DNA from: Bispira polyomma
Lineage: Eukaryota
Reading direction: 5' to 3'
NCBI GenBank assembly: GCA_965649765.1
Contig: OZ287758.1
Location: forward strand, 39,990,001 to 40,054,000
DNA: 64,000 nt
The translations under genes were made by a program, and so were the position numbers. The notes below the pieces were generated by a model. It saw only the letters and a list, made by a program, of their open reading frames with translations. It did not search any database and was not told the DNA's origin. Shown here piece by piece: positions 2,693 to 46,250 of this stretch. How positions within the stretch are numbered: the first letter of the stretch is position 1; each line of letters opens with the position of its first letter.

Positions 2693-2789
2693 AATAAATA
2701 AGAATTTTGTTTTAAAAGACTTTCTTTTACATTGTTTTATTGTTAACGAGTTTTATATATTGTGTCACACTGTCAGTAAATTGTTCACT

Positions 2790-7907: not shown

Positions 7908-7913
7908 TTTCAG

Positions 7914-14841: not shown

Positions 14842-17800
14842 ATGGATACCATACTATATTTAGGTAATACTTACTTTGTGATGATGCCATTCAAGTTTGT
14901 ATCAAACAATATTATAATTATTTTATGCATTAAGGAAAACTTAAGATAAGTGTTGTGTAGCCAATATCAACACTCTTAGTATCGAGAAATTACCATTTAA
15001 AGATGGTTTTTCTTTAAGAAAATGGGCACTCTATACTAAGAAAATAAATTTTTTATGCAAAAAATATAGTTTTGATCTGTCCAAACAGGAAATGAAAGTA
15101 TTTGTAAATTAATTTAAATGTGAGTCCAATTGTCTTAAAATCAATTAACAGTAATAATAATAATCCTAAAAATGTATAATTTTCTTGATGTTGACAGTTC
15201 TTAAGATCAACAAATTCTCAATGATGTCATTTTTAATCAAAGACAAATGCAAACATCTGGTAGTTTTTACGCATAAATACAAAGTTATGAAGAGCCTGTT
15301 GTAGTCAAGATTTCCATGGACAAATCAACTTATTTGTCCAATAATTCAACTAATTTGTCTGCAACCACAACAATGTTGATGGTACATTTTATTGTGGCAT
15401 GTTATTATTTTTCAACTTTACAACAGACTGCAGGTATCTTTGAGATTTGACCTAAACAGGTTTTAACTGGGTATGTATATACCAATAAATACTAATTACA
15501 TTTTCTGACTCGAGTTTTGCATTTAATCTTCAACTTTCCCTGGTGAACATAAGGAATGTTATTGTATTTCTAACAAACATATTATCATGGTGATAACATC
15601 CTTGGGCAAGATGTAAACACGCTCTTGCCTAGTGGTCTGGATGACCACTTAAAATTGTGGTCCTCTAACACTGAGTCCTGTCTCCAGTGGCAGGTTAAAG
15701 ATCCTTAGGGGTGTGGATGAATGGTCCTCTTCAAGCCTAGATTGGCTTCCCTAGTGGCTGCCCATGAGCTCGCTATAACAAATATCATATGTTGTGTTAT
15801 GGTTTTTGACTTCAGCTTGCCTGATGCTATTCCTACAAATAGTGGTTGCCATGGTTACCAGCATGAGGTTACCTAACCAAATTGTGTGTGTTCAGACAGA
15901 TAACCCATCAGTAGAACTGCCCTGCGGTGATCTAGTAAATCCCCCACACATCAGAGTGAGGGAATGGGCCAGGTATCTGCCAAATGAAAAAACGTTTATT
16001 ATCATCTTAGGGCCTCCAAATGATCACTATGACAGTGACTATATAACCAAAGTCAAATATGAGATGACTGACACGTTTTCCATGGTTATTTCTCAAGTAC
16101 AGTTGTCTGATGCTGGATTGTACATGTGTCAGTCCATAACTGGTCCCAAACCACAGGCTTACTATGTGATGCTACACGTACTGGGTAAGTGTCTACATGT
16201 GTTTTTGAAATGATTTAAATTTAAGTCAGTTTTTACGTCGCATTCAACAGCTTAGGTCACATCGCGATGGCCAGATTTAATGGTGGAAAAACCAGTGCTG
16301 AAGCACACTGTAAAACACCAACCTACAGCAAGTACCTGACAAACTTTCCCACATGATGGATTAGTGAAAGGCTAGACCAAATAATCTGTCCCTATTTAGT
16401 GAGATTCCTTGATGTTATTTTGATGACAGACTCACGAAAAGGGACAGAACAGCCACCATAAGGAAAACATTGTAAATTTACCCTGACGTAACATGGCCGA
16501 CAGTGTTGTACAAAATGATTTTGGTTTAGTTTTTATATTAATTCATATGTACCAGCGCACAAAGACTAACACCCATTAAGGCCAGGTACCTATTTATACA
16601 CCCGGGTAGAAAGGGACAACTTTGTGTAAAGCACCTTGTCCAAGGGTACAATCTCCGGGCATGCAGCAAGAATCAAACCAGGCCTCTGAGATCACTCAGA
16701 TCCAAAGACTGACATTCTAACAGCTAGACCACGGAGACTAGTTTGCCTTTCAGAATATTCCTCAAATAAAAATGGTATTTCAGTATGAAATATTTGTTTC
16801 TCAGCCAATGATAAAGTCTGCTCCCAGATGACTACCAGTATTCCAGAGACTTTGAACATCCAGCCCAGGGATGGTCAAACCACAGAGAGAGAACTGACTC
16901 AAAGGATATGTAAGTGTTATAAAGAACAGCTCAGGTCGATTGCAAATTTAGTCCCTCTTGAATCTACTAAGCTAGGCTGTAATCGGTTAACACATACGGT
17001 AAAACAGTAAAAGCACAGGGGAGTAGCCAGGATTTTTCATCTGGTACTCCCAAATTAAATCAATATAATATGTTCGTTTTTATGTGCTACCAAAAATTCA
17101 ATTCGTGGGGGAAGGGGTGGGGGGGGGGGGGGGGGGGGGGGGGCATCAAGGTAATATTTTGGTTTAATTGGAGGGTACCAACATTTTTTTTATTTAACAA
17201 CAGGAATCTATGTTACTACTAAAACAAACAGATTAAAACGAATTTTTATTTATTTTTTTTTTTCTTGTCATTAAATTGGTACGCCTGGGCGTACTGGCGT
17301 TAATGGTAGCTACGCCCCTGTAAGCATCCATATTAGAGTGAACACTCGTGGGATCAAGTCAAATTGTCCACTGAAAAGAAGTGTTTCATATTCAGAAGTT
17401 ACTGTACAATTCACTAGTATCAAAACAGAACCATGAATGGAATCGAATTTGGGATCATTGAAGTTATGCTGTATACTTATATACAGATAATCAAAGTATG
17501 GACCACAGAGGCTCTACAGTATACTAAGATAATAGAAGTTTGGATAAGCCTATGGTTCATTTCAGCCGATTTTTGCAAGCCGATGTCGGCCAAATTTATC
17601 GGTCATTACTTGATGTCATGAAGTGCTTCCTTTAATCTGATTCGATCTGACGTCTATTTTACCTTCAGATGTTAAGTGTCTGGGAGCTAAAAAAATCATT
17701 CGGCATGTCGGATGAAAGAATGGTACGTGCTACATCAGCCAACATTGGAACGACTCGAATGTTAATAAATTGGCCAACATCGGGATTAGCTCTCTCTTTA

Positions 17801-20800
17801 CTCTCTTGAGGTTACTGAAGGAAAGACAAGTATTCTGGATAATTATTTGGTCCTACAACTGGTGGGTAAGTGTGTGCAGGTGTTTATGTGATAGAACATA
17901 TAAGTCTTAAATCATTCAATGAAATAAAAAAAATACAGCACATGCAACCTGTTAGATACAAAGGTGTCATAGCCTGGACTTCCATGTTGCTAATCACGAC
18001 GTTGGCCGGTTTTATTTATAAGTGCATTTGGTCAGATGTTGGTCTACAAATGCATTCATGCAGCTGACAACAATATGTCCTGCATGTCGCATTCAATTTG
18101 AATTATATTTTAAAAACACGCCGATCTTTTGCTTCCTGGTCCAAATATCTGAAACTTCTGACAACATTTGATCTCATCCAACATATAATAGTGGCAATAT
18201 TGTAAGAGTATAGGGACAAAATATGTTCAAAATATTTCCGCTGACGTCAGCTGATATATATATATATATATATATATTTATCTGATACATAGAAGTGAAG
18301 GCTAAGGAGAATAAATATATTTGTTTGTAAATGTGTGTGTAGGTTTATAATCTGATAGCCCTCTATTGAGGTCTCAGTCGACTTTACAGTTTACATCCCA
18401 GGCTGGGTTCTTTCACTTGTCAACCAATTGTTTAGTCTCAGATCCCTCAGGAAGCATACCAGCCATGCAGCCACATGCGGCACACACAAACTAACACCCA
18501 TTAGTGACCAGGTACCTATTTATACACCTTAATAGAGAGGGACAACCTTGTGTAAAGCACCTTGTGCAAGGGTACAATCTCCGGGCATGCAGGGAAAATT
18601 GCACCAGAGCTCTGAGATCACTCAGATCCAAAGTGTGACACTCTAACTGCTGGGCCACGGAGACCATTCACTTATTAGAATATTCCTAAAATAGAAGTGG
18701 TATTTCAGTATGAAAGATCTGTTTTTCAGCCAATGATAGAGTCAGCTCCCAGATGACTACCAGTATTCCAGAGACTTTAAGCATTCAGCCCAGCAATGGT
18801 CAAAACATAGACAGAGAACTGGTTCAAGGGACATGTAAGTGTTATAAAGAACAACTCAGATCTATTGCAAATTTAGTCCCTCTTTAATCTACTAACCAAG
18901 GCTGTAATCGGAAATACAGTAACAGCATCCATATTAGAGTGAACACTAGTGGATTCCATTCAAATTGTTCACTCTAAAGAGTTGTTCTCTATAAAGAGTG
19001 AAGGCTAAGGTGAATATATGTATTTGTTTGTAAATGTGTGTGTAGGTTTATAGTGTTACAGTTTACACCCCCAGGCTGGGTTCTTCCACTTGTCAACCAA
19101 TTGTTCGGTCTCATGCGGCTCACCAAAACTAACACCCATTAGTGGCCAGGTACCTCTATATACACCTTGGTAGAGAAGGACAACATTGTGTAAAGCACAT
19201 TGTCCAAGGGTACAATCTCTGGGCATGCAGCAAGAATCGAACCAGAGCATTCAGATCAAAAGTCTGACACTCTAGCCGCTAGGCCACGGAGACCGTTCGC
19301 ATATCAGAATATTCCTAAAATAGAAGTGGTATTTGAGTATGAATTATTTGTTTTTCAGCCAATGATACAGTCAGCTCCCAGATGACTACCAGTATTCCAG
19401 AAACTTTGAGCATCCAGCCGAGTATTCCAGAGACTTTGAACAACCAGCCCAGTTATCGTCAAAACATAGACAGAGAATTGATTCAAGGAACATGTAAGTG
19501 TTTTAAAGAACAGCTTAGATCTATTGTAAATTTAGTCCCTCTTAAATCTACTAACCCAGGCTGTAATCAGTAAACACATACAATAAAAGCATCAATATTA
19601 GTGTGAATACTCGTGGAATCAGTCAAATTAAAGAGGTGTTCTCTATTGAACGGTTACTGTACAATTCACTAGTATCAAAACAGGATTATGAATGGAATCA
19701 AATTTGGGATCATAGAGGCTCTACTGTATACTCAGATAATAAAAGTTTGATTAAGCCTACACTTAGTTTCAGACGATTTTTGCAGACTGATGTCAGCCAA
19801 ATTTATCAGTCACAACTTACGTAAGTCACTGCAGGGCCGGACAGCATGACAAGTCAGTTGACAAAAATTAAGGGTTTACAGTAAAATATCTTAAAATTTG
19901 TTTACTAGCTTGATGACTAATCAGAGGTCACCTAGAAGAAGGTTTTGCCACCTTTCCTATAGAATTATCATATTTAATTTAGAAAGCTAAAGCATCAACA
20001 AGTGGAAAATTTCCCACCCTCCACCCAATTTAAGGGCTTTTAGCTGAGTAACCTTTTAATAAACTTGATTGTTCCATTTAACACGAACTATACGTGTATG
20101 TCCGGTCATTCAATAATGCACCATTATATGTTAATATATCCTTTTTAATAACCTTTACGGTTCTATTTAACACAGACTATATGTGTATGTTGGGTCAATT
20201 AATAATGTGCCCTTATATGTTGATATAATTTGATTGTTTTACTTAAGATATTTTACAGTATTAAAGATGTGTATTATATAGGGTTTTATACTTTTTAGTT
20301 AACCTGTGTATGCTTATTGGCAGTTATAAAAGTTTTTATACTTTAACATTTGTATGTACAGTTGATATAAAATATAATTGAATACTAATAAAATACTCCA
20401 AACTTGATTTAATCCAGTCTTATACCTTGGTTTGACCTACACTAGTCAGAAACTTTTAAGCGACTGATGTTATGAAGTGCTCCCTTTCATGAAATTTTCG
20501 TCAGATTTGATCTGATGTTAGCAGACGTTTTTTGTTTTAAATGTTATCAGTCTGGGAGCGAAAAAATCAAGTTGGCATATCTGATGACAGAAAACGCTAC
20601 ATCGGCCGTCATCGGAATGGCTCGAATGTTAATAAATTGGCCGACATCTGGATCAGCTGAAAGGAAGCGTAGTCTGATGGAGGTACTACTGTATGTGGAT
20701 AATTAAAAGTTGGAAAATAGAGATTCTACTGTATTTGGATAATAAAAAGTCGGAAAATAGATGTTCTACTGTATACTAAGATAATAGAAGTTTGGATAAT

Positions 20801-22844
20801 TGAGGCTGTACTGTATTTTATACCACTGTACCTATCTATTAAAATCTCTCTATTTTGTACTACAGCTAAGCTGGCCAAGGCTGGGTTTATGTGTCTGATA
20901 ATAGTATGTGTATTACTCTTCTGCTTCCTGTTGTTTGTCATCATTCTGTGGATGTCACATAGAAGAAACAAAAGGCATGCCAACAACAGAGGTAAGTCAT
21001 TTAATAATAGCATGTTTCCATACACACGTGTAAAAGTCCATCCGTGTACCCTCCTGTATGCACCTAAAAATCTTTGGCTCCTTATCTTTTTCTTCGTAGT
21101 GTTTCCATGGGTCTTTGTACATCATGCGTATCCAGTCTTGGAACCGACAGATTGTCAACGGCAGATAACTACGCTTTACAGCCAATTGTTCTGGTTCTAA
21201 TAAAATGTCTTAGCTTACAAACATGGCTTTCGTAGGGGTTTTCACACAGTCAACAACTGATTTATTTTCCACCAAGGGCCAGTAGAATTAGTCAGCCTAA
21301 GCTGTTGGAAATGACAAAAAAACTAAATTCTCATTCTACTCAGACGAAGAAGGGAGATTTTGGTCCTATGAGAACAGTCATGTAGTTGTAGGTTTTCAAT
21401 TGTATTTTTGTAAAAAAAGTGGGCTGTCACAAAAGTGTCAGAGGGTTTCTTGATATTTAAATTAAATTAATAATGTTATATAGGTGATAAGCTCCCCTCA
21501 AATTTCTGACCCACAAAGGTCATATGCAAAGTAAGCATTTCACCGAAACTTTGTGAGTATCTTAATATGTTACCAAAAGCAATACCACTAGTAGTACTAC
21601 TATATATTATATTTATTATAGTGACAAGTGTTTTGGTTGACACTCACACACTTAGTATCACACACCATTTTTAACGCATTTAAAAAGTTTCTTTGCATAA
21701 CAAATAAAAATTAGAATGCTAGAAATAATTGTATACATATGGTGTTTTTTTATTCTTTTTAAACACAGGGTCTTGCAGACTAACCAATGAGTTGTCTGTA
21801 AAGTACACTGGATTAGAAAAGAAATCAGCTAAATTTGCTACAGGTAAAATTTAAGTTGAATTTAATTAGTGCTTTTGGAGTGATTTTACTATTTTCGGCC
21901 AATTTACTAAGATGCATCTTCAGAAGCTATTTACTTAAGGGCGTTTTTGTAATGTTCGACCATATTGGATTTAACAGGAAATTACCTAGTTCTTTATTTT
22001 TCAAGATAATAGAAATAAGTAAATTATCTCTCACTAGATACTGCTATTACTGTGGCCAAAGCTCTTCAGAGTAACTGTCTTGACTATTGTAATTCCCTTC
22101 TGTTTGGAACTAATAAGTCACACATAAACAAGTTGAAGTCCATTCAAAACTATCTATGTAAAGTCATCTTTCGTTTGGGAATCCGTACTGATGCAACTCC
22201 ATACCTCCAGCAACTCCATTGGCTTCCAATTCACTATCGAATCCTGTTCAAAATGCACGTAACTACCTTTAAAGCAGTTGTCTCCCAACAGCCTCACTAC
22301 TAACTCTCCTTCAGCAGCCTTAAAAGGGTAAAGAGACTCTCTGTTTCCTCTAAAAAAACCACTAAGAGAGTCCTTCTTGGTCGCCGCTCCTATGCAATGG
22401 AAAAGCCTTCCAGTTAAACTTAGAATGCTTGAAACACTTTCTGGATTTCTGAAAAAACTCAAAACATATATCTTCAGGCTCGCCTTTCCTCTGTAGTCCT
22501 CTCCCCAGGTGGTAATGTATCCATCCTTATGACCTGGCTATTGCTTATTGATTTTTCTATTGGCTAATTGATTCTAATATTGTGCCTTAAAAAGATGCTT
22601 AGCATCAATAAGGCGCGTTAAAAATATACAATACAATAAGGAATAAAACAATAAAGTAGTTAAATAGGACACTGGTGTCTACCAAGTTGCATCCACTAGT
22701 CCCTAGGCCCAAGAGCTTCCGGATAATACAGTTCCTATGAAGTGAATTTGTTCCATTCTAAACTATCCCCTAAGGTGTCTGTATAACTAAGACCTACTTC
22801 TTTTTACAGATAATGATTACGAAACCATCAAGGAAGTACTTTAA
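14842..22844 (+). CDS. IgR-1: single V-type Ig-domain type I membrane receptor with ITIM. Exons: leader 14842-14863 or 15373-15433; V 15843-16184; stalk 16805-16909, 18730-18834, 19359-19493; TM 20866-20991; cytoplasmic 21769-21843 and 22810-22844 (stop)
   Basis: All internal exons are AG/GT bounded and phase 1-1. V-set motifs ELPC, REWAR and SMVISQVQLSDAGLYMC; hydrophobic TM followed by RRNKRH; tail motifs VKYTGL and NDYETI. Confidence 0.85.
15843..16184 (+). CDS. IgR-1 V-type Ig exon
   Basis: CAAATAG| acceptor and CTGG|GTAAGT donor; B-strand Cys, C-strand Trp, DxGxYxC. Confidence 0.92.
16560..19295 (-). mobile_element. Three CORE-type tRNA-SINE copies (~16560-16740, 18360-18665, 19055-19295), one upstream of each stalk exon
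   Basis: Minus strand CTCCGTGG(C/T)C(T/C)AGC A box, GGTTCGATTC-like B box and a GTACCCTTGGACAAGG...GGTGTATAAATAGGTACC CORE-like segment. Confidence 0.7.
17016..17320. mobile_element. MITE (hAT-like termini)
   Basis: Termini CAGGGGAGTAGC / GCTACGCCCCTG; absent from the paralogous stalk repeat near 18925. Confidence 0.75.
20866..20991 (+). CDS. IgR-1 transmembrane exon
   Basis: SKLAKAGFMCLIIVCVLLFCFLLFVIILWMSHRRNKRHANNR; TACAG| acceptor and |GTAAGT donor. Confidence 0.9.
21769..21843 (+). CDS. IgR-1 ITIM exon
   Basis: 75 nt, phase 1-1, strong polypyrimidine tract; reads GSCRLTNELSVKYTGLEKKSAKFAT. Confidence 0.75.
22066..22635 (+). mobile_element. L2-like LINE 3' fragment
   Basis: LDYCNSLL...LHWLPI motifs; 3' end GATGCTTAGCATCAATAAGGCGCGTTAAAAAT. 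Confidence 0.85.
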
Positions 22845-25800
22845 GATGGATCTGAAAGAACAGCAGAATCAGTAGGTAAGTATTTATTTATTTTAATATT
22901 TTATGTTTAACGTCGCTTTCAACAAGGTGACATTTAAGGAACCCAAATTAGACGTGGGAGGGGCGTGTGTTACCACTAAATCACCGAGGCCCCACCACAC
23001 CCCTAACCAATCACCCACTTTCTCTTTAGAGTTAATACAGAAACAATTTATCACCACCTTAAACACATTGTGTAACTTGTAGCATTTTCCCCTTTCATAT
23101 TCGTCAACAAATAGCTATTTAGAGTCAATAAGGAGAAATTTAACGGGACATCAAACACAATTTATGGTTTTTACCAACAACATGTGAGGATAATAAAAGC
23201 ATTGACAATTTTTTATGGATGAAAACCGTTCATATTGATTCTGAGAATGTTTAATTGTATTTTTTTATAATTCCAGTCATGTAGTTAACTACTTAGGTGT
23301 AGAGAAAGACAGACTGGCTGTGTTGACTCTTGGTAGAACAGATGAATTACAAAAGAATGGACTGGACTTAATCACTGTGTATTTTTTGTTTCTTTTTAAA
23401 GGATAAAATTGTAAATTGCTTTCAATGTATTTAACATTCAAAGACAAACTATGACCCATATTCTCCAAAAAAAGTCAAGCTCGAAAATCAGTTTAACTCC
23501 TGTATGTGGAAGTAACCTACACTTGTGACCCTGTTGATTCCTATAGAGCTTCAGTGCTGACATTAATAATTACTGTCAGATTTGATGTTATGCTATCACT
23601 ATAGATAGGGAGATACCTTAGATTAGAGGTTGAGTTTCTGTTGAGTTTGATTTGGTTTGGAGAATACAGTCTCATTTCTAGAAAGCTGCCAAGCTTTGTA
23701 ATGTGTAGTACATTATGTGTATAATAGTATATGTAAAAAACTGATTAAATAACAAACTGTTCTCCACATATGCTATCCATGATTGTATTCTAACATTTAT
23801 ATTTTTACTGACGTAGTTGCTAATATATTATGTTATTGTATATACTATTACGTGAACACAAACATTTTTTCTGTGAAACTATAGGACCTACAGAGGTGCT
23901 GATTTTGGAGAGATAACTTGACATAGTCAGGATCCATGATTGTGAAAATAAGTGATAAACATTGGTTGTTACACAAAAACAGATTTTAAAAGGGGGATCC
24001 CTAATTCCCACCATGGATCAACATATACTTGGGTGTATGGCACCATTAATTGACTAGGTCATCTGGATCTATATGTACATTAACTTACTACACTAAAAGT
24101 GTTCTTGAAGTAGTCTTATCTTTCCTGTACAATCAAGAATGCTTGAAGGGATTAATTAATAATGGTGCAGGTAATTACCTCACTACCTAATTTCTATTTA
24201 TTCTCATTCACAAAGAGATTAGATCCTGAGAATTGCCGTGGAAATTGGATTAAGGTCACTTTAATTACCACAAAAAAAAAAATCATTCCTTAATTTGGCT
24301 CAAGAAATTTAATGGACTGGTCAGATTTGATCTAATCTCCTGGGTTTATGTTCAAGTTGGATATCCTGAGGTCCAAATTGTATGTCAAATTTTGTGTCTT
24401 AATCATTATTCAGATTTGATCTATAATCTTGAGGGCAAGGTCAAAGTGGTCAACTTGTGACACGTTCAAAATAATGTTCAACATAATAGAGGTGTAGTAT
24501 CCAAGTGTAGATTTTGTGTTACCTATAGAATATATTCCACTTTTAAAACCTGCAAGAATCCAGTTTCATAGACCTGCTTTTGTTTTCTTCTTTTTTGAAA
24601 ATATTATTACATTTATTTATTATTTGTATTTTGCTTTTTGCATGATTATGCTTTCCTCTAGATAGGGGGTGTACAGTGGGAGAACCATGGTAACCATGGT
24701 TACATCGTGTTGACTAGGTAATCTCAGAACTTACAAGGATTTCAGCTTTCATATTTGGAATACATATGGAGTCTGTTTCAGTGATGGTCCATTTGTAATT
24801 TGGTATTAATACAGCTAGAAATAAGTGAGAAACAGCCATTTTCTGTTTTGGGGATCGTGAGCTTTCATTGAAGAGTCCATTACCGTCTATTTTCGGTATT
24901 TTGTTTGTAGTCAATTTTCCATCTTCATGGAATAAATTAACTGAGTTCATCAACCGTTTCATTAACAAATAGTTTGGCTGTTTTGGTGAATAAAAGTAGA
25001 ACACAAAGTAAGGTCAAGTGATCTTCCGAACATGTGCATCAATACCCTCATGCTAATTTATTCCCACAAAGACGCAAAATTAATGAGACAGCAATTTTAT
25101 AGCATATGTCTTGACACGGGCCTGTTTTCGACAGAATAATCAGTTCTGTATTTGTATTATTTTGTATTATCGCCCACTGAAGACCACTGTGCTGTACTGT
25201 ACTCGCAAATTTCGGGATATTGTAGGCACATGCACAGTCTTCATAAAGCCATACCAAATAGAAGCAAGTATCCTTTATCTGTTTAATATATAATTTTAAT
25301 GAAAAATATATAAGTAGATATAGTTCTCGAAATCGATTTTGACCGTTAACTAGTGACTGGTCTACTATTTTCGGACTTGTCAGTAACTTGCTTTGTGGTT
25401 GCATTATTATGATATTGCCCCCATGCCATTCTCCTCTTGTTACTTTCTTGTACTTCAGTATTGTTTCTTTTAGAATCTAATATTATTTTTTTTTTCTTTC
25501 ATTAAATGTATTTCTTTCTTTTTTCGACAATTGTATCTTGTTGTGACTTTTAGTATCATATAGTGGAACATGTTATTCTTGAATAAATATAATGCTAAAA
25601 TCTGGTTTTAGTTTAGTTTTGACACAATCTGGTTTTGTTTAAACATATTAACTTGAGATTGAAAATTGGTAACCTTAATTATCTTGTATAACTTACTAGA
25701 AATGTAGACAGACTGTAGGTTAGAAAATATTTTATATTATTTTACAAATAAAGATTGCCTCAAACATGAATAACCCAAAAGCCACATTCAACAGTAGCAG

Positions 25801-32437: not shown

Positions 32438-32440
32438 GGC

Positions 32441-34465: not shown

Positions 34466-36228
34466 TAGAAGTTTTATGGCTAGATTGAAGTGCACTCATG
34501 CTTGCGTACTCATCCTTACGAAAGCTCGGCAGTATGAAAGTGTTGAGAATGATTTAATTGTACTCTTGCCACTGTGTGCTCATCCTTACAAAGCTTTGTG
34601 GTATACACTCGTGCTTGCGTACTCGTCCTTACAAAGCTTGGCAGTATGAAAGTGTTGATGTGTTAGATCGTGCCCTTGCCCTGAACATTATACAGTATGA
34701 GATCTTGCATACACTCTTACTAGTATTTAAAGAATGACATCATTTTATATGATAAAGCTGTTCATACATTTATAAAAACTTGTAAATACATACTCGTTTA
34801 CCCACACCGATATAACCATAACTTGCGATTTTTTGTACTAACTGCTTTCATTAAAATGTTATAGGGCCCACAGGATCAGAACTATGTAAATTGTTTGATA
34901 CATCATTTATTAATATTTACACACATTAGTGTTTCAATGTAAGGATTTAATGCAAAGCTTTATTTAAATATGATGGATCGGTCATCAAATATTAAAACTT
35001 TAACAATTAATTTTTTTCTGATGGAATTGATTGAAGATCCTGACATAAAAAAAATACTTTTTAAAGATAATATTTAAGTTATTATTTGAATTTATATATT
35101 TGGATTTATTACATGATGCTTACTGTTTTGTTGAGCTTGACATTATTTTTACAATGGCATTTAAATGGTAAACATTCCATTGAAAAATATCAGAGATATC
35201 TTAATTTAAGTTTTCACTGGCTCTTTTATTTCACTTATGTTACATTAATGCCGAAACATTACTACATAAACAAATGATATATGTTCTATTTACAAGCAGT
35301 TTCTATTCTACACACAAGCACATAATTAGTGGCACTTTATGTTGATTTATTTGCAATGTATAAGATGTATAAGGTATTCATTTAAAAATTATCCACAGTC
35401 ACATCAGGGAGGTAGTTTCATTTTCGTTTTTGGTATGTCTCTTATCCATTAAGCTTGGCAAATGTAATCTCCTCTTAAAATAATTAATTCAGACTTTTTT
35501 AACCTAGCTCGGTAAACTATTGCAGACCTCGAAATTTTACCTGGATGAAAATTTCACTAATTTATAATATTAAAAAAATTCTCCCATTTTTGCCGATATC
35601 TCCAGTTTATGCCCAGATGTTAGACGTTAGAAGATCACACAAGTTCTTGCCATCTGGAGTAAACGGCTCTATAAATGGAAAGGTGTGAATGTGACATTAT
35701 AAAATAGTTAAGAAATTACTTACTGGGGAAAACTTTCGCTAATGCAGTTAGTTGGGACACGTTTCAGTTAAACAATTGTGGGATATTTTTCTCTCCTATA
35801 TTTAGCTTGATCAATCTAATAGTGTAGTTGAATTTAGTGGTCCATTGAAGGATTGCAATGATAGTGGAATATTCCATCAGAAAAGAGGAAAAATTAAGGA
35901 CAGAAATTTAATGATATAGAAAAACATAACAGTAGTTGTTGGGGATTTGAATGCAAAATACTGCATCATTTGAAATAAGCACATTTTGAAAGTGGTGAAA
36001 GTTATTTTTAAAGTTACGCTAAAAGGAAATGGATATTGATTTATTTGTATTGCCTTAGAAATAGCTATTGGCCACATGCATTCAGAGCCAGGGCAGACAA
36101 TTACATGAATGACATGACACAGATTGACATAACTGATGTGAATATAGCATTCAATATACAGTTTACAATTACGAAATACGTACTTTATGTAAAAGCACAT
36201 TTTATCAGATATATTGTAATAAAACAAA

Positions 36229-39200
36229 ATGGATACCATACTATATTCAGGTAATACTTACTTTTTGATACTACAATTCAAGTTTTATCATTTGTATTAA
36301 ACATTGTTATAATTATTTTATGCAGTAAGGAAAACTTAATATTGGTAGAAATGTTATTATATTTAATTGGACAAAAAGGAAAAGTGACATCCGATTGAGG
36401 TTTCAATATCATACAGTACTGGCTCTTATGAAATCAGCACTTTTCTTAATATAGAGAAATTAATATTTAAAGATGGTTCCCTTCAAGGAAATGAATACTC
36501 TATATTAAAATGACTTTTCTTTTATGCAAAAAAAATGAATCAATCTGTCCTAGCAGGAAACAAAAATATTCCTAAATAATACCAAAAATATATAAATTCC
36601 TTTATGTTTACTGTTCATAACATCAACAAATTTTCAATAATGTCATTTTTATCAAGGACAAATGCAAACATCTGGTAGTTTTTATGCAAAAATACAAAGT
36701 TATGAAAAGTCTGTTGTCGTCAAGATAAACCGTTCCAGGGAAAAATAATTCAACTTATTTATCTGTCACCACATCAAAATTACTTGGTTTAAATTGGTCA
36801 CAATATCAATAATACTTGGTTTGAATTGGACAAAACATCAAAAATACTTAGTTTAAAACAAAATAATGGCTTGGCAACTTCATAATTTAATAAGGACATT
36901 ATCAGAGAAGTGACAGAAAACCTTGTCCAAAAACACTTCAAACTGGATATAACAACACAAGGCATTTGACATATGTTTTTGGATGTTTTGGGTTGCCGAT
37001 TATTTGATGTTGCCCCCTATTAAAAGGGCCTATGAGATGGCAGAATACATCTGATCATGTGTGTTTCTGCCAAGGCACTGAACCTACGGCTGAGATGACA
37101 TAGGCAGTGAGGTACTATCTCTGCAATTTGACTGCCTCTGTAGCTCGGACTTGGTCCTGTTAGCCCATTTCAGGCAACACCATCCCTTGCCTCCAAGCCT
37201 ACTCAACCACTTGATGGTTTCCACCATCTTCCTCGTTCAGTTGCCCTCCTCCATGCATGCCTAGGTAGCGGATCCTTATATGGTTGTGCAGTGTACAACA
37301 GGCCATCACTATGGTGGTGACTGTGTATGGCTCCTGCCTCGTGGTTGTGAGAAGACAGTTTTAAGCTCTTTAAAGGTGGTCTGATCCTCCAGCTCTAGCT
37401 CGGACATTAAGTTCTCATATTGCCCCTATTGGGACCTCCTTAGCAGCCAGCTCTGCACCCAAACACTCCGCTTTGCCCTTCTCCTATATATTCTCAGATA
37501 ATACCGCTACATGGCTAAGTTCAATTGAGCTCTAAACAACTGTACATGAATTGAAATGAAATAGTACATTTGTTATACTGCACTTATAGAACAGAGCCTC
37601 CCTTCAAATGCGCTTCCTCATGGGCAGCTACTATGACCATTTATCAACCTCTCTAAGGATCTTTAATGTGCCACTGGAGATATTACTCAGTGACAGAGGA
37701 CCGCCATTTTAGTGGTCATCTGAGCCACTAGGCAAACTTGTGTTCACATCTTGCCTAAGGATGTTATCCCACTAAAATGAAACTAGTGGCTGGTACCGGG
37801 ACTTGAACCGGGGACCTTCTGATCATTAGACCAACACCCTAACCACTAGACCACAGGGGATCACAATTGTTGACATACATCCACCAAGATATTTAAAAAT
37901 TTAATTCTTTCAAGAGCCATGACTTAATCAAACAGTTGTACAATGTGTCGCCATCAAAAGCTACCAATAATGAATAGAAGGTCAGTTTTTTGGAGCCTTA
38001 TATAGTGATCTGTCTAGGTTTCCGTATCTTCATCCCCTGCCAGATAAGTCAAGATATGTCATGATCCGGACCAGAAACCCCTCTGATCGGCAAATAGTAT
38101 ATAAGATTGGCTTCCATAGTGCCTGCCCATGAGTGTTGTGTTATGTTTTTTTGTCTTTAGCCTGCCTTGTGCTATTCTTACAAATAGTGGTTTCGATGGT
38201 TACCAGCCTGAGGTTACCTAACCAAACTGTGTGTGTTCAGACAGATACCCCATCAGTAGAACTATCCTGTGGTGATGTAGTAGTTGTAAATCCCCCAGAC
38301 ACCAGAGTGAGGGAATGGGCCAGGTATCTGCCAAATATAAACGAATTTAATGTCATCCTATGGTCTGCTTATGTCAACAATAATAGGGACTATAGAAGTT
38401 CTGTAGTCAAATATCAGATGACTGACACATTTTCCCTGGTTTTTTCTCAAGTACAGCTGTCTGATGCTGGATTGTACATGTGTCTGCCCATAGGTGGGTC
38501 CCAACCACAGGCTTACTACGTGATGCTACACATTCTGGGTAAGTGTGTTCATGCATTTTTGAATTGATTTGAATTAAGTCGTTTTCAACAGCTTAGGTCA
38601 CATCGCGATGGCCAGATTTAATGGTGGAATTAAAAAGTGCTGAAGCACAATGTAAACCACCAACATTCAGCAAGTACCTGACAAACTCTCCCACATGGAG
38701 GACAAACAGGATTAGTGAGAGGCCAGTGATTGTGAAGCATGTAGTCCACCATGGCCCCTGAGTGTACATGTGTTGGTGTGATGATATATACGAGAATTTC
38801 TGTTGTTTTGGGGTTTTCCAAAACCGAGGGTTATTAATGATATTTGGTGGTATAATCTAAAAAAAATCATTGCAATACAGTAAAACCTTCATTATCTGAA
38901 CTCAAAATTCAATTTTTATAAACTCTTTACACTTTTCTATTGCTTTATATTAAAATACCTTTTCTATTTTAGAAAAGTCCAATTATCCAAACAATACTTC
39001 CTGAAGGGGAGTTATAGCAGTTTATATTTGAGTGTAATATCTGCTAATATTTATGCAAGTAGTGATCTAAAAACCTTTTTTTTTGAAAGGGTGGAAGGTG
39101 GTGTGGTTTTAATTAGAGAGGGGTCCTTTATTACAGAAAAATATGGTATATAAGAATTATGTATATACCTGTACCTCCTTTTTACAAGGCCCCTGTTAGG

Positions 39201-39445
39201 ACATAAATATTTTTCAGGACCATGTCTATGAGAATAAAAACCTAGAAGATTTTTTGCCAATTTGGGTATTATGTGATGGAAAAGTGTGCACAGGTGTTTG
39301 TGTAATATTAAATATAAGTTTTAAATTCTTCAATTAAATTCGCAGATCCTGAAATCAGCCGAATTAATAGAAAAGTTTTTTTGTTCTATACTTTTATAAA
39401 GCAGAAAAATATATTTCTATTTGTCACATTTCATTAGAATCCTGT

Positions 39446-39534
<89 letters not shown>

Positions 39535-42500
39535 CACAAAAACGCCCAAAAGTCTGTCACCTCAAAATAATTAGAGCTTTCATTTGATCATTATCTGCAC
39601 ATGAAAGTGGCTGTACTGTAGGTATTAAGAAAAAAAATTTGCTAATGTCGGCTAATGTCGGCCTTTTTATAATACTTGATATGATATGATAGATTTTTAA
39701 CGCGCCTAATTGATGCTAAGAATACTCTAAAGCGCAACATCATTGACAAAGTTGTAAAAATTATAGTCCGTTTCCGAAGCAAATCTGTGATTGGGGTGAT
39801 GTGTAGGGGAAAGATGTCTATAGGGGGTAGGTTAGGGTAATGAGATGGGTCTCAAGGTTACTTCTAAAGCCAGGTAGGGTTTCCTGGTATCGCATATTGG
39901 TTAGTATTATTTCATAGGTTAGGTGCTGCAACAGAGAATGCATAGAATCCAATTAATTTATTAGTCCTTAGTTATGAGACACTGAAATTATGTTTCCCTT
40001 GATAAGCCTGCTAAAAGACAGCAATGAGTCAAGATAGGCGGGCTGACATAGGTATACAGTTTGTATGTAGTAGCATTGGTCTTGAAAATAAGGATATCAG
40101 AAAGGATATCAGAGATATCTTAATTTGAGTGTTGACTGGCTCAAATATTATGTGTTTATTTTACTTATGTTACATTAATGCCAAAACATTACTACATAAA
40201 CAAATTATATATTTTCCATTTACAAGCAGTTTGTATTCTACACACAAACACATAATTAGTGGCAAGGAAATTTTGCAAATAATATTGTTTCAAATTCAAC
40301 ATACAAGATATATAAGCAAGTATATTGAAACGTTTACACAGTAATATCAGGAAAGTAGTTTCATTTTCGTTTTTGGTAGGTAGTTAGTTATACAGTCTTA
40401 CATCATCTTCTTATCCATAAACCATCAAGCTTGACAAATACAATTTCTTTAATAAAATGAATTCAGACTTTTTAAACCTAGCCAGGTAAACTACTGTGGA
40501 CGATAAAATTTTACCTGGATGACAATTTCACTAGTTTACAATATTAAAGAAATTTACTGGATTTATTTTCACTGATTGACCAATTGTTATTTGAAACATA
40601 AAAATACAAATGTATTTTCCATATTGAAAGACAACAGTGAAGCAAGATACAGGGATTGACATAGATTTACAGCTTTATATGTAGTAAAAAAATTATAAAG
40701 TACTTGACAGGTAGTCAATGTAGCCTTATGAGATATGGAGTCGTATTGAGGCGAGATCCCAAATGGCACACAACTTTGCTGTCGAAGAAGCAGAGATTAC
40801 AGTAGGTTAATCGATTACTTATGAGTGCATTTGCTATGACTATGGCGGTTTGATGGGATAGGTGTTTTGTGATTTTCTTGAGGTCGCCAATATAGAGGTA
40901 GCAAGATCGACAAATATTGGAAGAATGAGGATTGAGTTTGAGAGGTGGGAAGGTGTGGTTTGATAAAGTCAGTTGCTCTAAAGGCAGATCTGATCTTGGC
41001 AATATTATCAATAATAAATTCTCCAAATCGATTGGGAAGAAAATTGGTACAACGGTGATCTGGTAGTGAGCTCCCTGATTGACACAATTCCAAACCATAA
41101 AATATTTGTTTGTCTTTCCGAATATTTATAAAAAACAATTGTTATTTAAGTATGATATACATTTTTCAGCAGATCATACAGTTAGTTGCCAAATGTATAC
41201 CAGTGATCCAGAGACTTTGCCCATTAAGCTTAGGCATGGTCAAAACAGAAACAGAAAACTGATTCAACGGGCATGTAAGTGTTATAAAGAACAACTCATA
41301 GCTTTAAAACCTACTAACCTCTATAAGGATAACACTTGCAGTAAAAGCTCCCTACATTGAATGCTCATGAACTGCCAAATTGTCCACTGCAAAGAGGTGC
41401 TCACTTACAATTCACTGGTATCGAAACAGGATCATCAAAGGAATAGAATTTGAGATCATAAAGGTTTTACTGTATTCAAACATTAAAAGTATGGACAATA
41501 AAGCTTCTACTGTATTCAAATAATAAAAGATTGGACAATAAAGCTTCTACTGCACTCAGAGACTAGGTATTTCGAACAATTGAGGTTCTTCTGTATTTAG
41601 ACAATAAAATATTTCAGATAATAACGGTTCTACTGTATAAAACTGATAGAAGTTTGATGATATAGTTAAAGAAAATGAAGAGTGTTGATAATATAGAGTT
41701 ACTATTGTATCTATCTATTAAAAGGCTCTCTATTTTGTACTACAGCTAAGCTGACTAGGGCAGGGGTTGTGTGTCTGATAAGTGTAAGCGTATTACTCTT
41801 CTGTTTCTTGGGGTGTGGCATCATTCTGTGGATGTTACATAGAAGAAACAAAAGGAAAGCCCACAACAACAACAACAGAGGTAAGTCATACAGTAATAGC
41901 ATGTTTCCATACGCACATGTAAATGTCCATCCGTGTACCCTCATATGTACATATATAAAATCTTTGGCTAGTGATCTACTTCTTTATAGTGTTTCCATGG
42001 GTTCAACGTGGGAATTATGCGTATCTGTAATGCTCCGTTCCATGGGTCTGTGTACATTATGCGTATCTTTGATGCTTCATTTCCATGGGTCGGTGTACAT
42101 CATGTGTATCTGTGATGCTTCATTTCTATGGGTCTGTGTACACAATGCGTATCTGTGAAGCTCTGTGTTCAAGGATTTGAGTACATCATGCGTATCTGTG
42201 ATGCTCCGTTTCCATGGGTCTGTTTACATCATACGTATATGTGATGCTCCATTTCTATGGGTCTGTGTACATCATGCGTATCTGTAATGCCTCGTTTCAA
42301 TGGGTCTGTGTAACAATGCGTTGTGGTGCTCTGTTTCCATAGTTCCGCCGTGTACATTATGCGTATCTGTAATGCCCCATGGGTATGTGTACATCAAATG
42401 ACACTGTAATACTCTGTTTCCATTGGTCCGTATACAACATGTGTATTCGTGATGCTCCATTTTCATGGGTCCGTGTACACAATGCGTATTTGTGGTGCTC

Positions 42501-45021
42501 TGTTTCCATGGGTCCGTATACAACATGCGTATCCGTGATGCTCCATTTTCATGGGTCCGTGTACACAATGCGTATCTATGGTGCTCCGTTTCCATGGGTT
42601 CTCTCTGTACATCAGGCATATCCGTGATTCTCCGTTTCCATGGGTGCGTGTACACAATGCGTATCTGTGATGCTCCATTTCCATGTGTCCATGTACATAT
42701 TGCACATCTGCAGAAAAGGCAATCTGGTAATGGACAGATTGTCAACAACAGATGACTGACGCTTCACAGCCGATTGTTTTCGTTCCATGCATGTGATTTT
42801 CTAGGCACATTGTCCTCAGATTAAAATGTCTCAGCTTACAGACATGACTTTCATGGGGTTTTCACACAACTAATTTATTCACCACTAAGGGGCAGTAGAA
42901 TTAAGCAGTGCGTGTCGACTAATAGCTGAATGTGTCGAGTATATGTGAAACATTTAAAAGCTAAGAAACTAATCAAATCAGTGTTTACTGTCCGGTATAT
43001 CGGCTGTTGGCTATAGGCTACATAGGCTATGTTTCCAAAGCTTTGGTCCCTAGATATTATATTTGTCATGGATGGGGTCACGATGTAACCCTTTTATTCA
43101 ATTGAGCAAATAGGTAAGGTAAGGAGAAGGTAATATTTTGTCACTAGTATTATTGTGTTAAAAACCAGCTCAAAAACTACAGACCGGTGTCAAACCTCAG
43201 CTTCGTCTCAAAAGTCATCGAGAAAGCTGTAGCTAAACAAATTTCTGACCACCTTAATAGACAAAACATTGAAAATCTCCATCAGTCTGCTTATAGAAAG
43301 TTTCACTCTACAGAAAGTGCCCTTTTTTCAATTAGCAATGATATCAATCTTGCACTGGACCGCAACGACACAGTGGCCCTCACCCTTCTGGATCTCTCAG
43401 CTGCATTCGACACTATCGATCATGTCCTGCTCTGCGACACTCTCAAGCAGTGGTTCGGTATAAATGGCAGTGTCCTTAAATGGATCAGATCCTACCTTAC
43501 TCTTAGGGCACAAAGAATTAAACTAGATGATCACCTATCATCTTCCATGAAACTTCCATATAGAGTACCCCAAGGATCCGTCCTTGGTCCTCTACTTTTC
43601 ACCCTTTATACACATCCTCTTAGCACTGTCATCAATAAACACAATATAAAACACCACATGTATGCAGACGACACTCAAGTCTATCTCTCCCTCAATCCAC
43701 AAAATGCAGATACTAACATAGACCTACTTGCAGACTGTCTGTCTGATGTCCAGGCGTGGATGAACTACTCCAAACTAAAGCTTAACCCTGACAAAACAGA
43801 ATTCATCCTCATAGGAAACAAGAAAAACAGTGAACTCCTAAAATCTTTGTTTCCCATCTCCCTGCTGGGAAAAGACATACTACCTTCCGAAAATGCTAAA
43901 AACCTGGGTGTCACTTTTGATTCAGCTTTTTCGTTCGATACTCATGTTGCCAACATCTGTCGCTCCTACTATTACCACATACGTGACATCAAAAGAATCA
44001 GAAACCACTTGTCCATGGACACAGCCATAACTGTGGCAAATGCCCTTGTGAGTAGCCGCCTCGACTACTGCAATTCTCTCTTGTACGAAGCAAACAAGTC
44101 AAACATTAAAAAGCTCCAGTCCATCCAAAACTACCTATGTAGGGTCATTTTTCGCCTGGGTTGTCACACAGACGTCACTCCTTACCTCAAAAAATTACAC
44201 TGGTTGCCCATTAAATCTCGAATTTTGTTTAAGATTCACGTTACCACTTTTAAGGCTGTAGTCACTCAACAGCCACCCTACCTTGCCTCCCTTCTTTCCT
44301 TCAGTAACCGCAAGAGAGGCAACAGACTCTCTGTCACTTCGGTCAGACCAATCAGAAAGGCGGGTTTAAGAGCATTCTCCACTGCAGCTCCACGGTTATG
44401 GAACAGTCTCCCAGTTGACCTCAGATCAGTTGATACACTTGTCAGTTTTAGGAAAAAGCTTAAAACCTATCTTTTTAATCTTGCCTACCCACCTTAGCTT
44501 TCCTCGTGCACGCTCCCACTTCCTTCCTTACGACTTTGCAATTTCCATGGACTTAATGATTGGACTAATGATTCTGCTGTTGCGCTTTAGAAGATGCCTA
44601 GCATCAATAAAGCGCGTTAAAAATCTATAATAATAATAATAATAATAACTAGTGTAAAGTTTGATTGAAATAAGGATAGCCCATTATAATCAAGTAGTCA
44701 GTAAAAGTAATTCTTATATTTAAAACATTTAAAATTTAGCTTATCTGTTTCCATATTCCTTTTTATACATTACATCTTACAAACATGTGGATAATAGATT
44801 CTTCTTCTAAGTTACATAGTCTACACTTTGCATTATGCGAGATATTGATTTGTTTCAGAAAACGTTGAAATCCTGGACCATGTGTTAGGATACTGTTTTG
44901 AAGCCAAATAATACGATTATCTATCACATTTCTAAAACAAGTTCCACATGCAAACTTCCAACTATCTATATCAATATTAGGATTCAAATCTGTATTTCAT
45001 TTGTCATTACAGAACACTTTT

Positions 45022-45073
<52 letters not shown>

Positions 45074-46250
45074 GTGTGTAACAAGGAATGAAACAATACA
45101 GTAGTTGAATATGGTACTGGTGTTGGTTTATACCGAGTTGCTAGTCCCCGAGACCAAGAGCTTCCAGATAAAACAATACCCATTAAGTAGAAATAAAAAG
45201 AGGTTGTCTTTGTGTTAGATAGGTAAATTGGCCTTATATATAATTTATTGTATCTATATATTTCGACCTTCTTATGGATTTAAGGTCTCATCAGAGGCTG
45301 AGGTATATTGTCACTGACTCCTTAAGGTATCAAATTTGGATCCGACAAGCTCCTGCTCCTTAAGGTGCATTATTTGGCTCCGGCAAGCTCCTGCAATACA
45401 GTTTATGGCTATATGCTGGATATTGATTTTTGTGATCCAAAACCTATAATTTATGCTATAGTGTGGATTCCCAGTAGGTAGTGGAAATATGTTTTGACCT
45501 TAAGATTAAGTAGATTTGTCCTGTTATAAAACTCTCCCAAGGTGTCTGTATAACCAAGCTCTACTTCTCCTTACAGATAATGTTTATGAAGAAGTTCAAG
45601 ATGGATCAGAAAGAACACCAGAATCAGTGGTAAGTATTTATTTATATTAATTTTTTGTTTCAGCTTTGGTCATATTTTGACGGCCATTATTAGTGGTGGG
45701 TGAAACCGGTGCCGAAGCATTGTAAACCACCGACCTACAGCAAGAACCTGATGAACTTTCTCACATAAAGAAAAAATCTGTGGAACCCCCCCCCCCCCCT
45801 CTATCACCCTTAACCCCCCACTTTCTCTTTAGAGTCAAGACAAAGATCATTTATTCTTACTTTAAACACATTGTATGGCTGATAGCATGTTTCCCCTACA
45901 TAGACTCAGCACAGAGACATTTATTGTTACCTTAAACACATTGTATGGCTTAGAGCATGTTCCCCTTGTATATTTTTGTAAACAAATATCTAATGGCTAT
46001 TTTAGTTTGGATTTAACCTTACTTTAACTATGTTAACACATCTTGCACCATCAACCTCCAGTAAATGTATTGTCAACTTTCCAAAAATACATCACCGACA
46101 GCAATGGTGAAAGGCGAATGTGATATTACTATATCCCCCCCAGATAAGGTAGAAAGCTTATTTGAAGCATTGAAAACATTTTTTCATGAATGAAAGCCAG
46201 TTCATATTGATTGTGATAATTTTAAATTGTATTTATAATTCCAGGCATGA
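36229..46250 (+). CDS. IgR-2: paralogous V-type Ig receptor lacking the ITIM exon. Exons: putative leader 36229-36250; V 38188-38538; stalk 41170-41274; TM 41746-41880; cytoplasmic 45577-45629 and 46245-46250
   Basis: Exons homologous to IgR-1, open and phase-compatible; tail reads DNVYEEVQDGSERTPESVA*. The leader exon is the least certain part. Confidence 0.78.
37655..37862 (-). mobile_element. tRNA-derived SINE
   Basis: Minus strand TGGTCTAGTGG A box and GGTTCAAGTCC B box; body matches a + strand fragment at 15597-15720. Confidence 0.8.
38188..38538 (+). CDS. IgR-2 V-type Ig exon
   Basis: ELSC, REWAR, SLVFSQVQLSDAGLYMC; AG/GT bounded; 351 nt. Confidence 0.92.
39449..39531. repeat. (TA)n microsatellite
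   Basis: Perfect TA run; shorter runs at ~18254, 45026-45070 and 62997-63048. Confidence 0.98.
39683..41070 (-). mobile_element. Interrupted L2-like LINE fragments
   Basis: Minus-strand 3' end (CTTAGCATCAATTAGGCGCGTTAAAAATC) at ~39690 and ICRSCYLYIGDLKKITKHLSHQTAIVIANALISNRLTYCN at ~40790-40920. Confidence 0.75.
41990..42710 (+). repeat. ~43-bp minisatellite, about 16 units
   Basis: GTTTCCATGGGTCTGTGTACATCATGCGTATCTGTGATGCTCC repeated. Confidence 0.95.
43160..44650 (+). mobile_element. 5'-truncated L2-like LINE with an uninterrupted RT frame (43187-44497)
   Basis: NYRPVSNL, QSAYR, LLDLSAAFDT, VPQGSVLGP, YADDTQ and LNPDKTE motifs; short 3' UTR and (TAA)n tail. Confidence 0.95.
44700..45020 (-). 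mobile_element. L1/Tx1-like LINE C-terminal fragment
   Basis: CRLCNLEEESIIHMFVRC CCHC-type motif. Confidence 0.6.
45192..45504 (-). mobile_element. ~313-bp ribozyme-bearing insertion (retrozyme / Penelope-associated non-autonomous type)
   Basis: Flanked by direct repeat ATTAAGTAGA (45182-45191 and 45505-45514); absent from the paralogous intron at ~22740; contains a hammerhead. Confidence 0.8.
45231..45298 (-). ncRNA. Type I hammerhead ribozyme
   Basis: Minus strand: GCCU-CUGAUGA-GACCUU(aaauccauaag)AAGGUC-GAAA-UAUAUA(gauacaauaaau)UAUAUA-UA-AGGC. All core nucleotides and three stems are present. Confidence 0.9.

What the first reader, a model, noticed from the sequence alone, without database searches (positions are those of the whole stretch)
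14842..46250. Candidate paired V-type Ig receptor system: an ITIM-bearing and an ITIM-less paralog in tandem
Seen: two spliced single-V-domain membrane proteins built from phase-1 exons. IgR-1 has an exon encoding VKYTGL plus a distal NDYETI; in IgR-2 no such exon is found between the TM exon and the last coding exons, leaving only NVYEEV, with the frame preserved. Known: (S/I/V/L)xYxx(I/V/L) is the ITIM consensus, and inhibitory/non-inhibitory pairs typify the CD300, Siglec, LILR and NITR families. Inference: an invertebrate immune or allorecognition receptor family whose signalling output is changed by whole-exon loss. I do not recognise it as a named gene.
Basis: partly seen in the sequence, partly recalled or inferred. 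Interest (0 to 1): 0.85.

Follow-up and report, generated by a model that had tools for sequence, protein, structure and literature searches.

The report
Worm single-V immune-type receptor cluster
A marine invertebrate, probably a segmented worm, has a small young family of antibody-fold surface receptors whose two-tyrosine signalling tail resembles vertebrate immune on/off switches; one copy lost half of that switch by a clean deletion and is more likely a muted or decoy receptor than an activating partner.

Summary
Observation confirmed. IgR-1 (323 aa) and IgR-2 (232 aa) are intact models: signal peptide, one V-set domain, stalk, uncharged transmembrane helix, short tail, all GT-AG phase-1 exons. 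They belong to a five-gene cluster on one chromosome (three more copies 400-520 kb upstream, one broken, interleaved with two TLRs) in a probable annelid. Four of five keep the exon with V-[KR]-Y-[TS]-[GA]-L; IgR-2 lost it through a 2.3 kb deletion ending at a (TA)n tract, after splitting from its sister copy C. Contigs of three DNA runs show no hidden second copy. Two corrections: (1) the tail is a two-tyrosine module, YTGL-x12-YETI, which also fits the ITAM consensus (FcRγ half-sites, FcγRIIA spacing), so its sign is not settled; (2) IgR-2 has no charged transmembrane residue or activating motif, so this is not a classical paired-receptor system. No RNA data exist here, so expression and splicing are untested. 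No close protein relatives in public collections. Exon-level ITIM switching is known in Botryllus FcoR and fly Draper; I found no annelid paper. The scan noted larger ITIM-IgSF families elsewhere in this genome before.

The parts
14242..14841 (+). IgR-1 proximal upstream region; IgR-2-type (93% to IgR-2, 78% to its 3'-sister B)
14842..14863 (+). IgR-1 first coding exon (ATG, start of signal peptide)
15816..16184 (+). IgR-1 signal-peptide end plus V-set domain exon
16805..16909 (+). IgR-1 stalk exon 1 (35 codons)
18730..18834 (+). IgR-1 stalk exon 2 (35 codons)
19359..19493 (+). IgR-1 stalk exon 3 (45 codons, internal 30-nt duplication); whole stalk 114 aa, 34% S/T/P
20866..20991 (+). IgR-1 transmembrane exon, no charged residue, basic stop-transfer segment
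21769..21843 (+). IgR-1 proximal tyrosine exon (VKYTGL; ITIM consensus, also first half of an ITAM-like pair)
22810..22875 (+). IgR-1 distal tyrosine exon (NDYETI) with stop at 22843-22845
23277..23760 (+). IgR-1 last (untranslated) exon; end approximate, poly(A) signal at 23744
36229..36250 (+). IgR-2 first coding exon
38161..38538 (+). IgR-2 signal-peptide end plus V-set domain exon
41170..41274 (+). IgR-2 single stalk exon
41746..41880 (+). IgR-2 transmembrane exon, no charged residue
43162..44645 (+). 5'-truncated LINE (RT fragment) inserted cleanly in the IgR-2 intron; not the cause of the exon loss
45018..45071 (.). Deletion junction: T6-C joined to the ancestral (TA)n tract; about 2,320 bp of the sister copy C, including the proximal tyrosine exon, are missing here
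45577..45629 (+). IgR-2 distal tyrosine exon (NVYEEV), phase 1 to 0
46245..46250 (+). IgR-2 last coding bases (Ala, stop); 3' UTR follows

Best explanation
A young, lineage-restricted tandem family of single-V-domain type I receptors evolving by birth and death. The V domain on a mucin-like stalk binds a cell-surface or microbial ligand; clustering lets a Src-family kinase phosphorylate two tail tyrosines 15-16 residues apart; the proximal V-x-pY-T-x-L site, helped by the distal pY-E-x-[ILV] site, recruits an SH2 phosphatase (SHP2/Corkscrew or SHIP) and damps an immune-type response. IgR-2 is a derived copy that lost the proximal site by an in-frame exon deletion at a (TA)n tract; it still reaches the surface and keeps one tyrosine, so it would act as a muted competitor or decoy that tunes the intact copies, not as an adaptor-coupled activator. 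Shown: anatomy, fold, paralogs, deletion, motif conservation. Inferred: expression, ligand, phosphorylation, phosphatase binding, immune role, decoy role.
For: V at -2, Y and L at +3 invariant in 4 of 4 exons with synonymous changes at V and L codons, among 6 invariant positions of about 23 (p about 0.011). Distal Y-E-x-[ILV] kept in 5 of 5, even after a 12-nt deletion removed the old +3 residue, while the C-terminus beyond it differs three ways. No conserved acidic residue before the first tyrosine. V framework under purifying selection (pN/pS 0.43), amino-acid variation concentrated in loops (36/51 vs 20/59 columns, Fisher p 1.4e-4). Coding indels among the four intact genes keep the frame, apart from one base at the last junction. 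One pseudogene and one orphan last exon in the cluster. Two TLR genes duplicated beside copies A and B. IgR-2 V exon still constrained (3 synonymous, 3 replacement private changes; dN/dS 0.37 to C). IgR-1 and IgR-2 share a 93% identical upstream region.
Against: No RNA evidence. The tail equally fits the ITAM consensus. No statistically shown positive selection: V dN/dS 0.37-0.81, loops 0.84. Only four intact sequences, so all selection tests are weak. About 110 TIR matches genome-wide, so TLR neighbours may be chance. An in-frame loss is automatic for a symmetric phase-1 exon and does not show selection for it.
Confidence: 0.48

Rival explanations
1. The tail is a long-spacer ITAM, not an ITIM: both tyrosines bind the tandem SH2 domains of Syk/Shark and the intact copies are activating (for example phagocytic) receptors, like FcγRIIA or Draper-I. 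IgR-2 is then the half-ITAM, signalling-dead or dampening copy: the reader's polarity reversed.
For: YTGL-x12-YETI (IgR-1), YTAL-x12-YETI (B), YTGL-x11-YEEL (C) all match YxxL/I(6-12)YxxL/I; shuffled tails do so 0.07-0.18% of the time. FcRγ reads YTGL-x7-YETL and FcγRIIA has a 12-residue spacer (PMC6433993 Table 2). Spacing stays 11-12 in all four copies; +3 is L or I in all copies with both tyrosines and V only in IgR-2.
Against: Invariant Val at -2 is the ITIM mark; no conserved D/E before the first tyrosine; spacer is at the upper limit of the consensus; ITIM plus distal tyrosine is the usual layout of vertebrate inhibitory receptors (own knowledge); spacing is partly fixed by exon structure.
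Confidence: 0.25
2. The exon loss is a neutral accident: IgR-2 is a redundant duplicate on its way to becoming a pseudogene, with no tuned role.
For: Break at a (TA)n tract; the same intron took a LINE and a 313-bp insertion; copy A is already dead (ATG to ATA, 1-nt frameshift in V, TM donor GT to TT); it is a single event in five genes.
Against: IgR-2 frame, start and all splice sites are intact; V and TM exons show dN/dS 0.37 and 0.19 against C and the fewest private replacements. This cannot be dated relative to the deletion.
Confidence: 0.3
3. Non-immune adhesion or guidance receptor family (neural, gamete or epithelial recognition) using the same tyrosine module.
For: The fold matches adhesion proteins (CD166, CAR, nectins) as well as immune receptors; no ligand or tissue data.
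Against: No orthologue of a conserved adhesion gene: no close match among 1.84 billion representatives or in two word-index searches; rapid turnover and loop-focused variation.
Confidence: 0.12
4. Assembly artefact: the exon was dropped at the (TA)n tract, or IgR-1/IgR-2 and B/C are two haplotypes of one locus placed in tandem (then IgR-2 is an exon-less allele of C).
For: The junction is a microsatellite; the junction itself was not displayed in the read tables; the three runs matched copy C without differences, so they are probably the assembled individual.
Against: No N in the window; the left flank joins the TA tract directly although C has unique sequence there; at 85% likeness only C's own contig covers the exon's acceptor bin in all three runs (depth 24.4, 68.5, 17.4, equal to that single contig); the blocks differ by about 8-15% in introns, by several transposon insertions and by a mosaic 5' end.
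Confidence: 0.07

Closest known systems
CD300 / TREM / TIM / PD-1 / TIGIT type single-V receptors of vertebrates
   Same: Signal peptide, one V-set domain, S/T/P-rich stalk, one TM, tyrosine-motif tail, phase-1 exons, tandem cluster (architecture from own knowledge; fold matches 2B4, pIgR, TREM2, PD-1, TIM-3 at 15-24% identity).
   Different: No sequence-level orthology; no charged TM residue in any copy, so no DAP12/FcRγ-coupled activating member; function untested.
Botryllus fester coreceptors, FcoR (PMC12582321)
   Same: Invertebrate IgSF type I receptors in clusters with ITIM, hemITAM and 'core' YxxI/L/V motifs; motifs are gained or lost at exon level; their core-2 motif ([A/D]VYxxV) resembles IgR-2's NVYEEV.
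   Different: FcoR switch by alleles and alternative splicing and are paired with fester-family genes in an allorecognition locus; here it is a genomic deletion in one paralog, the family is small, and no link to allorecognition is shown.
Hydractinia Alr family (PMC9546547)
   Same: Clustered invertebrate V-set IgSF membrane proteins with pseudogenes, ITAM or ITIM tails.
   Different: Alr proteins have one to three Ig domains plus an Fn3-like region and belong to a mapped allorecognition complex of about 41 genes; here one V, a mucin-like stalk, five genes.
Drosophila Draper-I / Draper-II
   Same: Invertebrate receptor whose output is switched by tail exons; ITAM binds Shark, ITIM binds Corkscrew/SHP2 (PMC4503800, PMC8092387).
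   Different: EMI/NIM-EGF ectodomain, alternative splicing of one gene, a true swap of motifs; here an Ig-V ectodomain and loss of one motif in a paralog.
FcRγ and FcγRIIA ITAMs (PMC6433993)
   Same: Half-sites YTGL and YET(L/I) as in FcRγ; 12-residue spacer as in FcγRIIA.
   Different: Short-motif likeness only, most likely convergent; Val at -2 gives ITIM context.

Membership tests
V-set IgSF type I membrane protein | B-strand Cys, C-strand Trp, D-x-G-x-Y-x-C motif, V-type fold | tested here: met
   C, W, D, Y, C invariant; Pfam V-set over cut-off; AlphaFold pLDDT 78 and V-domain matches TM about 0.75
V-set IgSF type I membrane protein | Signal peptide and single TM helix | tested here: met
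   Hydropathy peaks at residues 1-26 and about 250-275 (IgR-1), 170-200 (IgR-2); no dedicated signal-peptide predictor was available
ITIM-bearing inhibitory receptor | Cytoplasmic (I/L/V/S)xYxx(I/L/V), conserved | tested here: met
   VKYTGL, VKYTAL, VRYTGL, VRYSGL in four copies
ITIM-bearing inhibitory receptor | Phospho-motif recruits SHP-1/2 or SHIP and inhibits | not testable with these tools
   needs biochemistry
ITAM-bearing activating receptor | YxxL/I-x(6-12)-YxxL/I | tested here: met
   spacer 12, 12, 11 in IgR-1, B, C against the consensus in PMC6433993; not met by the narrower x(6-9) consensus in PMC9546547
ITAM-bearing activating receptor | Conserved acidic residue just before the first tyrosine | tested here: not met
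   positions -3 to -5 vary, no shared D/E; feature from own knowledge of canonical ITAMs
Paired receptors (CD300, Siglec, LILR, NITR type) | Linked genes with closely similar ectodomains | tested here: met
   V domains about 67-70% identical, 22 kb apart
Paired receptors (CD300, Siglec, LILR, NITR type) | One member inhibitory by motif, the other lacking it | tested here: met
Paired receptors (CD300, Siglec, LILR, NITR type) | Activating member has a charged TM residue for an adaptor, or its own ITAM | tested here: not met
   no K/R/D/E/H in any TM; IgR-2 has no ITAM or hemITAM
Paired receptors (CD300, Siglec, LILR, NITR type) | Ectodomains homogenised between the pair by gene conversion | tested here: inconclusive
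   upstream region is shared (93%, tree support 89) but V exons are only 85% identical, no closer than other pairs
Paired receptors (CD300, Siglec, LILR, NITR type) | Co-expression on immune cells, opposite signalling | not testable with these tools
   no RNA run
Allorecognition receptors (Alr, FcoR type) | High allelic polymorphism linked to fusion/rejection | not testable with these tools
   one assembly, runs from at most two samples of one study
Named vertebrate families (CD300, TIM, TREM, NITR) | Sequence orthology | tested here: not met
   best single-domain matches 26-35% identity, generic Ig

The most novel reading that the evidence does not exclude
An annelid has independently built CD300/FcγRIIA-like single-V receptors with a dual-use tail (ITIM context on an FcRγ-like long-spacer ITAM) that can recruit either SHP2 or Syk/Shark, and uses exon shuffling and exon deletion to make co-regulated intact and half-tail copies that set a self/non-self threshold, in step with linked TLRs.
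Probability: 0.12. Interest if true: 0.78.

Novelty: new member of a known kind. Interest (0 to 1): 0.45.

Why it matters
Tyrosine-motif Ig receptors are documented in cnidarians, tunicates, oysters and flies, but my searches found none described for annelids. A five-gene family with a natural deletion mutant, a sister copy that keeps the exon and 33-59 residue tails is a compact way to test whether lophotrochozoans use ITIM/ITAM logic and which sign this tail has. The deletion is mapped to the base, which is a clear example of how such tails are remodelled. The value is limited by the absence of expression data, by the single event, and by larger families of the same kind noted elsewhere in this genome.

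Tried and rejected
LINE as cause of the exon loss: rejected, it is a clean insertion 380 bp upstream of the deletion. A replacement ITIM exon in the IgR-2 intron: a strict scan found none; a loose scan gave 8 weak-site candidates, none homologous, 5 inside the LINE, and also false hits in C. Homologue searches with V exons: nothing; 67 generic Ig hits only. A GPCR neighbour as taxon marker: no hit at the strict cut-off I set. RNA support: no RNA run. Positive selection: not shown. Papers on hagfish APAR, amphioxus paired receptors and a sponge SAML ITIM: not found or not confirmed in the held library, so not used. The original Draper ITAM paper is not held. Rfam found no hammerhead at 45100-45600. 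The joined spliced proteins were not sent to any database search; they were built inside scripts only, and compared locally with the 67 proteins already returned.
Full report
OBSERVATION. The three motifs lie at the stated places. Exon models built from the sequence have AG/GT ends throughout and phase-1 joins. IgR-1: 14842-14863, V 15816-16184, three stalk exons, TM 20866-20991, proximal tyrosine exon 21769-21843, distal exon 22810-22875 with the stop inside it; 323 aa. IgR-2: 36229-36250, V 38161-38538, one stalk exon, TM 41746-41880, distal exon 45577-45629, last exon from 46245; 232 aa. The V exon passes the Pfam V-set cut-off, has V-set neighbours by language-model features and folds as a V domain with best matches such as 2B4, CD166, DNAM-1 and pIgR at 16-24% identity. 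These are fold-level matches and do not name a family. No RNA run holds the DNA, so splicing is inferred from splice signals and conservation.

ORGANISM AND FAMILY. The window is at 39.99-40.05 Mb of a 57 Mb chromosome in a 1.04 Gb genome. Erythrocruorin-linker exons over the Pfam cut-off point to an annelid; earlier scan notes said the same. Five close V exons exist, all on this chromosome: A (39.484-39.497 Mb), B (39.550-39.559), C (39.586-39.595), IgR-1, IgR-2. B (328 aa) and C (253 aa) are intact; A has ATG changed to ATA, a 1-nt frameshift in V and a broken TM donor. An orphan last exon lies at 39.611 Mb. About fourteen distant V exons (E 1e-8 to 3e-3) lie mostly on chromosome C5; I could not read them. 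No close relative was found among 1.84 billion representative proteins or by word-index searches. Searches were done exon by exon; the joined proteins were not sent to any database.

HISTORY OF THE PAIR. Window 16.5-51 kb is a block duplicate, mostly 85-92% identical, of the B + C segment about 440 kb upstream. For stalk, TM, tail and 3' UTR the tree is (IgR-1, B) against (A, (IgR-2, C)) with 100% support. The proximal tyrosine exon is present in IgR-1, A, B and C, so its absence in IgR-2 is a loss. The long-stalk plus short-stalk pair existed before the loss, with both tails intact. IgR-1 is a mosaic: its upstream 600 bp is 93% like IgR-2 and 78% like B, its stalk-to-3' part 88-97% like B, and its V exon 83-85% from all others. 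That is recombination between paralogs and gives IgR-1 and IgR-2 near-identical proximal upstream regions; co-expression is an inference.

THE LOSS. Against C, the IgR-2 intron has a clean LINE insertion (43162-44645), 378 bp of shared sequence, and then a deletion of about 2,320 bp that joins a T6 run to the ancestral (TA)n tract at 45025-45071. The exon is symmetric phase 1 and 72-78 nt, so the frame survives automatically. To test for an assembly slip I laid three DNA runs on the C segment at 85% likeness: the bin holding the exon's acceptor and first 30 bases is covered only by C's own contig in all three runs, as are two other unique bins of the segment. A retained IgR-2 exon at about 90% identity should have shown. 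Limits: contigs drop rare variants, the runs look like the assembled individual, and the junction itself was not among the rows shown.

THE TAIL. V(-2), Y and L(+3) are invariant in four exons that otherwise diverge strongly (p about 0.011 for all three to fall among six invariant positions). The distal N-x-Y-E-x-[ILV] is kept in all five, and in C and IgR-2 a hydrophobic +3 residue is present again after a 12-nt deletion; beyond it the proteins end in three different ways. So both tyrosine sites are the conserved parts. The first fits the ITIM consensus (PMC9546547). Together they also fit the wider ITAM consensus YxxL/I(6-12)YxxL: FcRγ is YTGL-x7-YETL and FcγRIIA has a 12-residue spacer (PMC6433993); IgR-1 is YTGL-x12-YETI. 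Shuffled tails give an ITIM 2.5-5.6% and such a pair 0.07-0.18% of the time. I favour the inhibitory reading about two to one, because of the invariant Val and the lack of an upstream acidic residue, but sequence cannot decide. On either reading IgR-2 loses bivalent SH2 docking. It has no charged TM residue and no hemITAM, so nothing marks it as an activator.

ECTODOMAIN. V-exon dN/dS is 0.37-0.81; framework pN/pS 0.43, loops 0.84, FG loop 3.6 on very few sites; variable columns are enriched in loops (p 1.4e-4). This fits ligand diversification but does not prove positive selection. IgR-2 shows no sign of decay in V or TM. Two single-exon TLR genes sit upstream of A and B and were duplicated with them; none was found beside the window's pair, and the genome has over 100 TIR matches, so this is a weak hint of immune context.

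MECHANISM. Most likely: ligand binding by the V domain, Src-family phosphorylation, SH2-phosphatase recruitment and damping of an immune-type response by IgR-1, B and C; IgR-2 a muted competitor, or simply a tolerated accident. Shown: structure, conservation, deletion. Inferred: everything from expression onward. Rivals are an ITAM-type activating tail (0.25), neutral decay of IgR-2 (0.3, compatible with either sign), a non-immune role (0.12) and an artefact (0.07).

KNOWN SYSTEMS AND NOVELTY. It is built like CD300/TIM/PD-1-type single-V receptors but is not a member by sequence. It fails the paired-receptor test on the activating member. Invertebrate IgSF receptors with ITIMs or ITAMs are known (Hydractinia Alr, PMC9546547; Botryllus FcoR, which swap motifs by allele and splicing, PMC12582321; oyster NCAM1, abstract of PMC11841013), and Draper switches sign by tail exons (PMC4503800). 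A search for annelid ITIM IgSF receptors returned only two general reviews. The scan has noted larger ITIM-type IgSF clusters on other DNA of this genome (unchecked AI notes). Verdict: a real, undescribed, lineage-specific family; a new member of a known kind; interest 0.45.

NOT DONE. 

Noticed in passing
L006:1-801 and L011:6919-9627 (C11 39.475 and 39.532-39.535 Mb): Two single-exon Toll-like receptor genes (903 and 919 aa open frames, 92% identical TIR region) lie 8-15 kb upstream of receptor copies A and B and were duplicated with them.
   Followed up: partly
L007:7414-7880 (C11 39492414-39492875): In pseudogene A the 3' end of the TM exon with its splice donor is tandemly repeated four times; the first donor is broken (GT to TT), later copies keep GT.
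   Followed up: partly
window 2670-8866: DIRS-like element (gag-like, RT-like and tyrosine-recombinase-like frames, judged by eye; no Pfam hit) with repeats at 2475-2692 and 9105-9324, inserted in the upstream region of IgR-1.
   Followed up: no
window 45182-45514: About 313-bp insertion absent from copy C, flanked by a repeated ATTAAGTAGA; the minus strand has CUGAUGA, a hairpin and GAAA (hammerhead-like core), but Rfam gives no match and the fold z-score is only -1.15.
   Followed up: partly
window 22019-22633: An independent LINE 3' fragment sits in the IgR-1 intron after the proximal tyrosine exon; B has one on the opposite strand at a similar place. This intron has taken several insertions next to its (TA)n tract.
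   Followed up: no
window 42017-42698: 43-bp minisatellite (16 copies) in the IgR-2 TM intron, shared with C and A, a single unit in IgR-1.
   Followed up: no
L021:3780-4658 and L023:3541-4689: Tandemly duplicated single-exon rhodopsin-family GPCR genes just downstream of copy C; no homologue at E 1e-20.
   Followed up: partly
G000 chromosome C5, about 6.5-70 Mb: Most V-set matches of the genome (28 of 36) lie on one chromosome, including distant relatives of this family's V domain.
   Followed up: no
window 62620-62850: Short frame with a VCGICHTD motif like zinc-dependent alcohol dehydrogenases; no Pfam hit at E 0.01.
   Followed up: no
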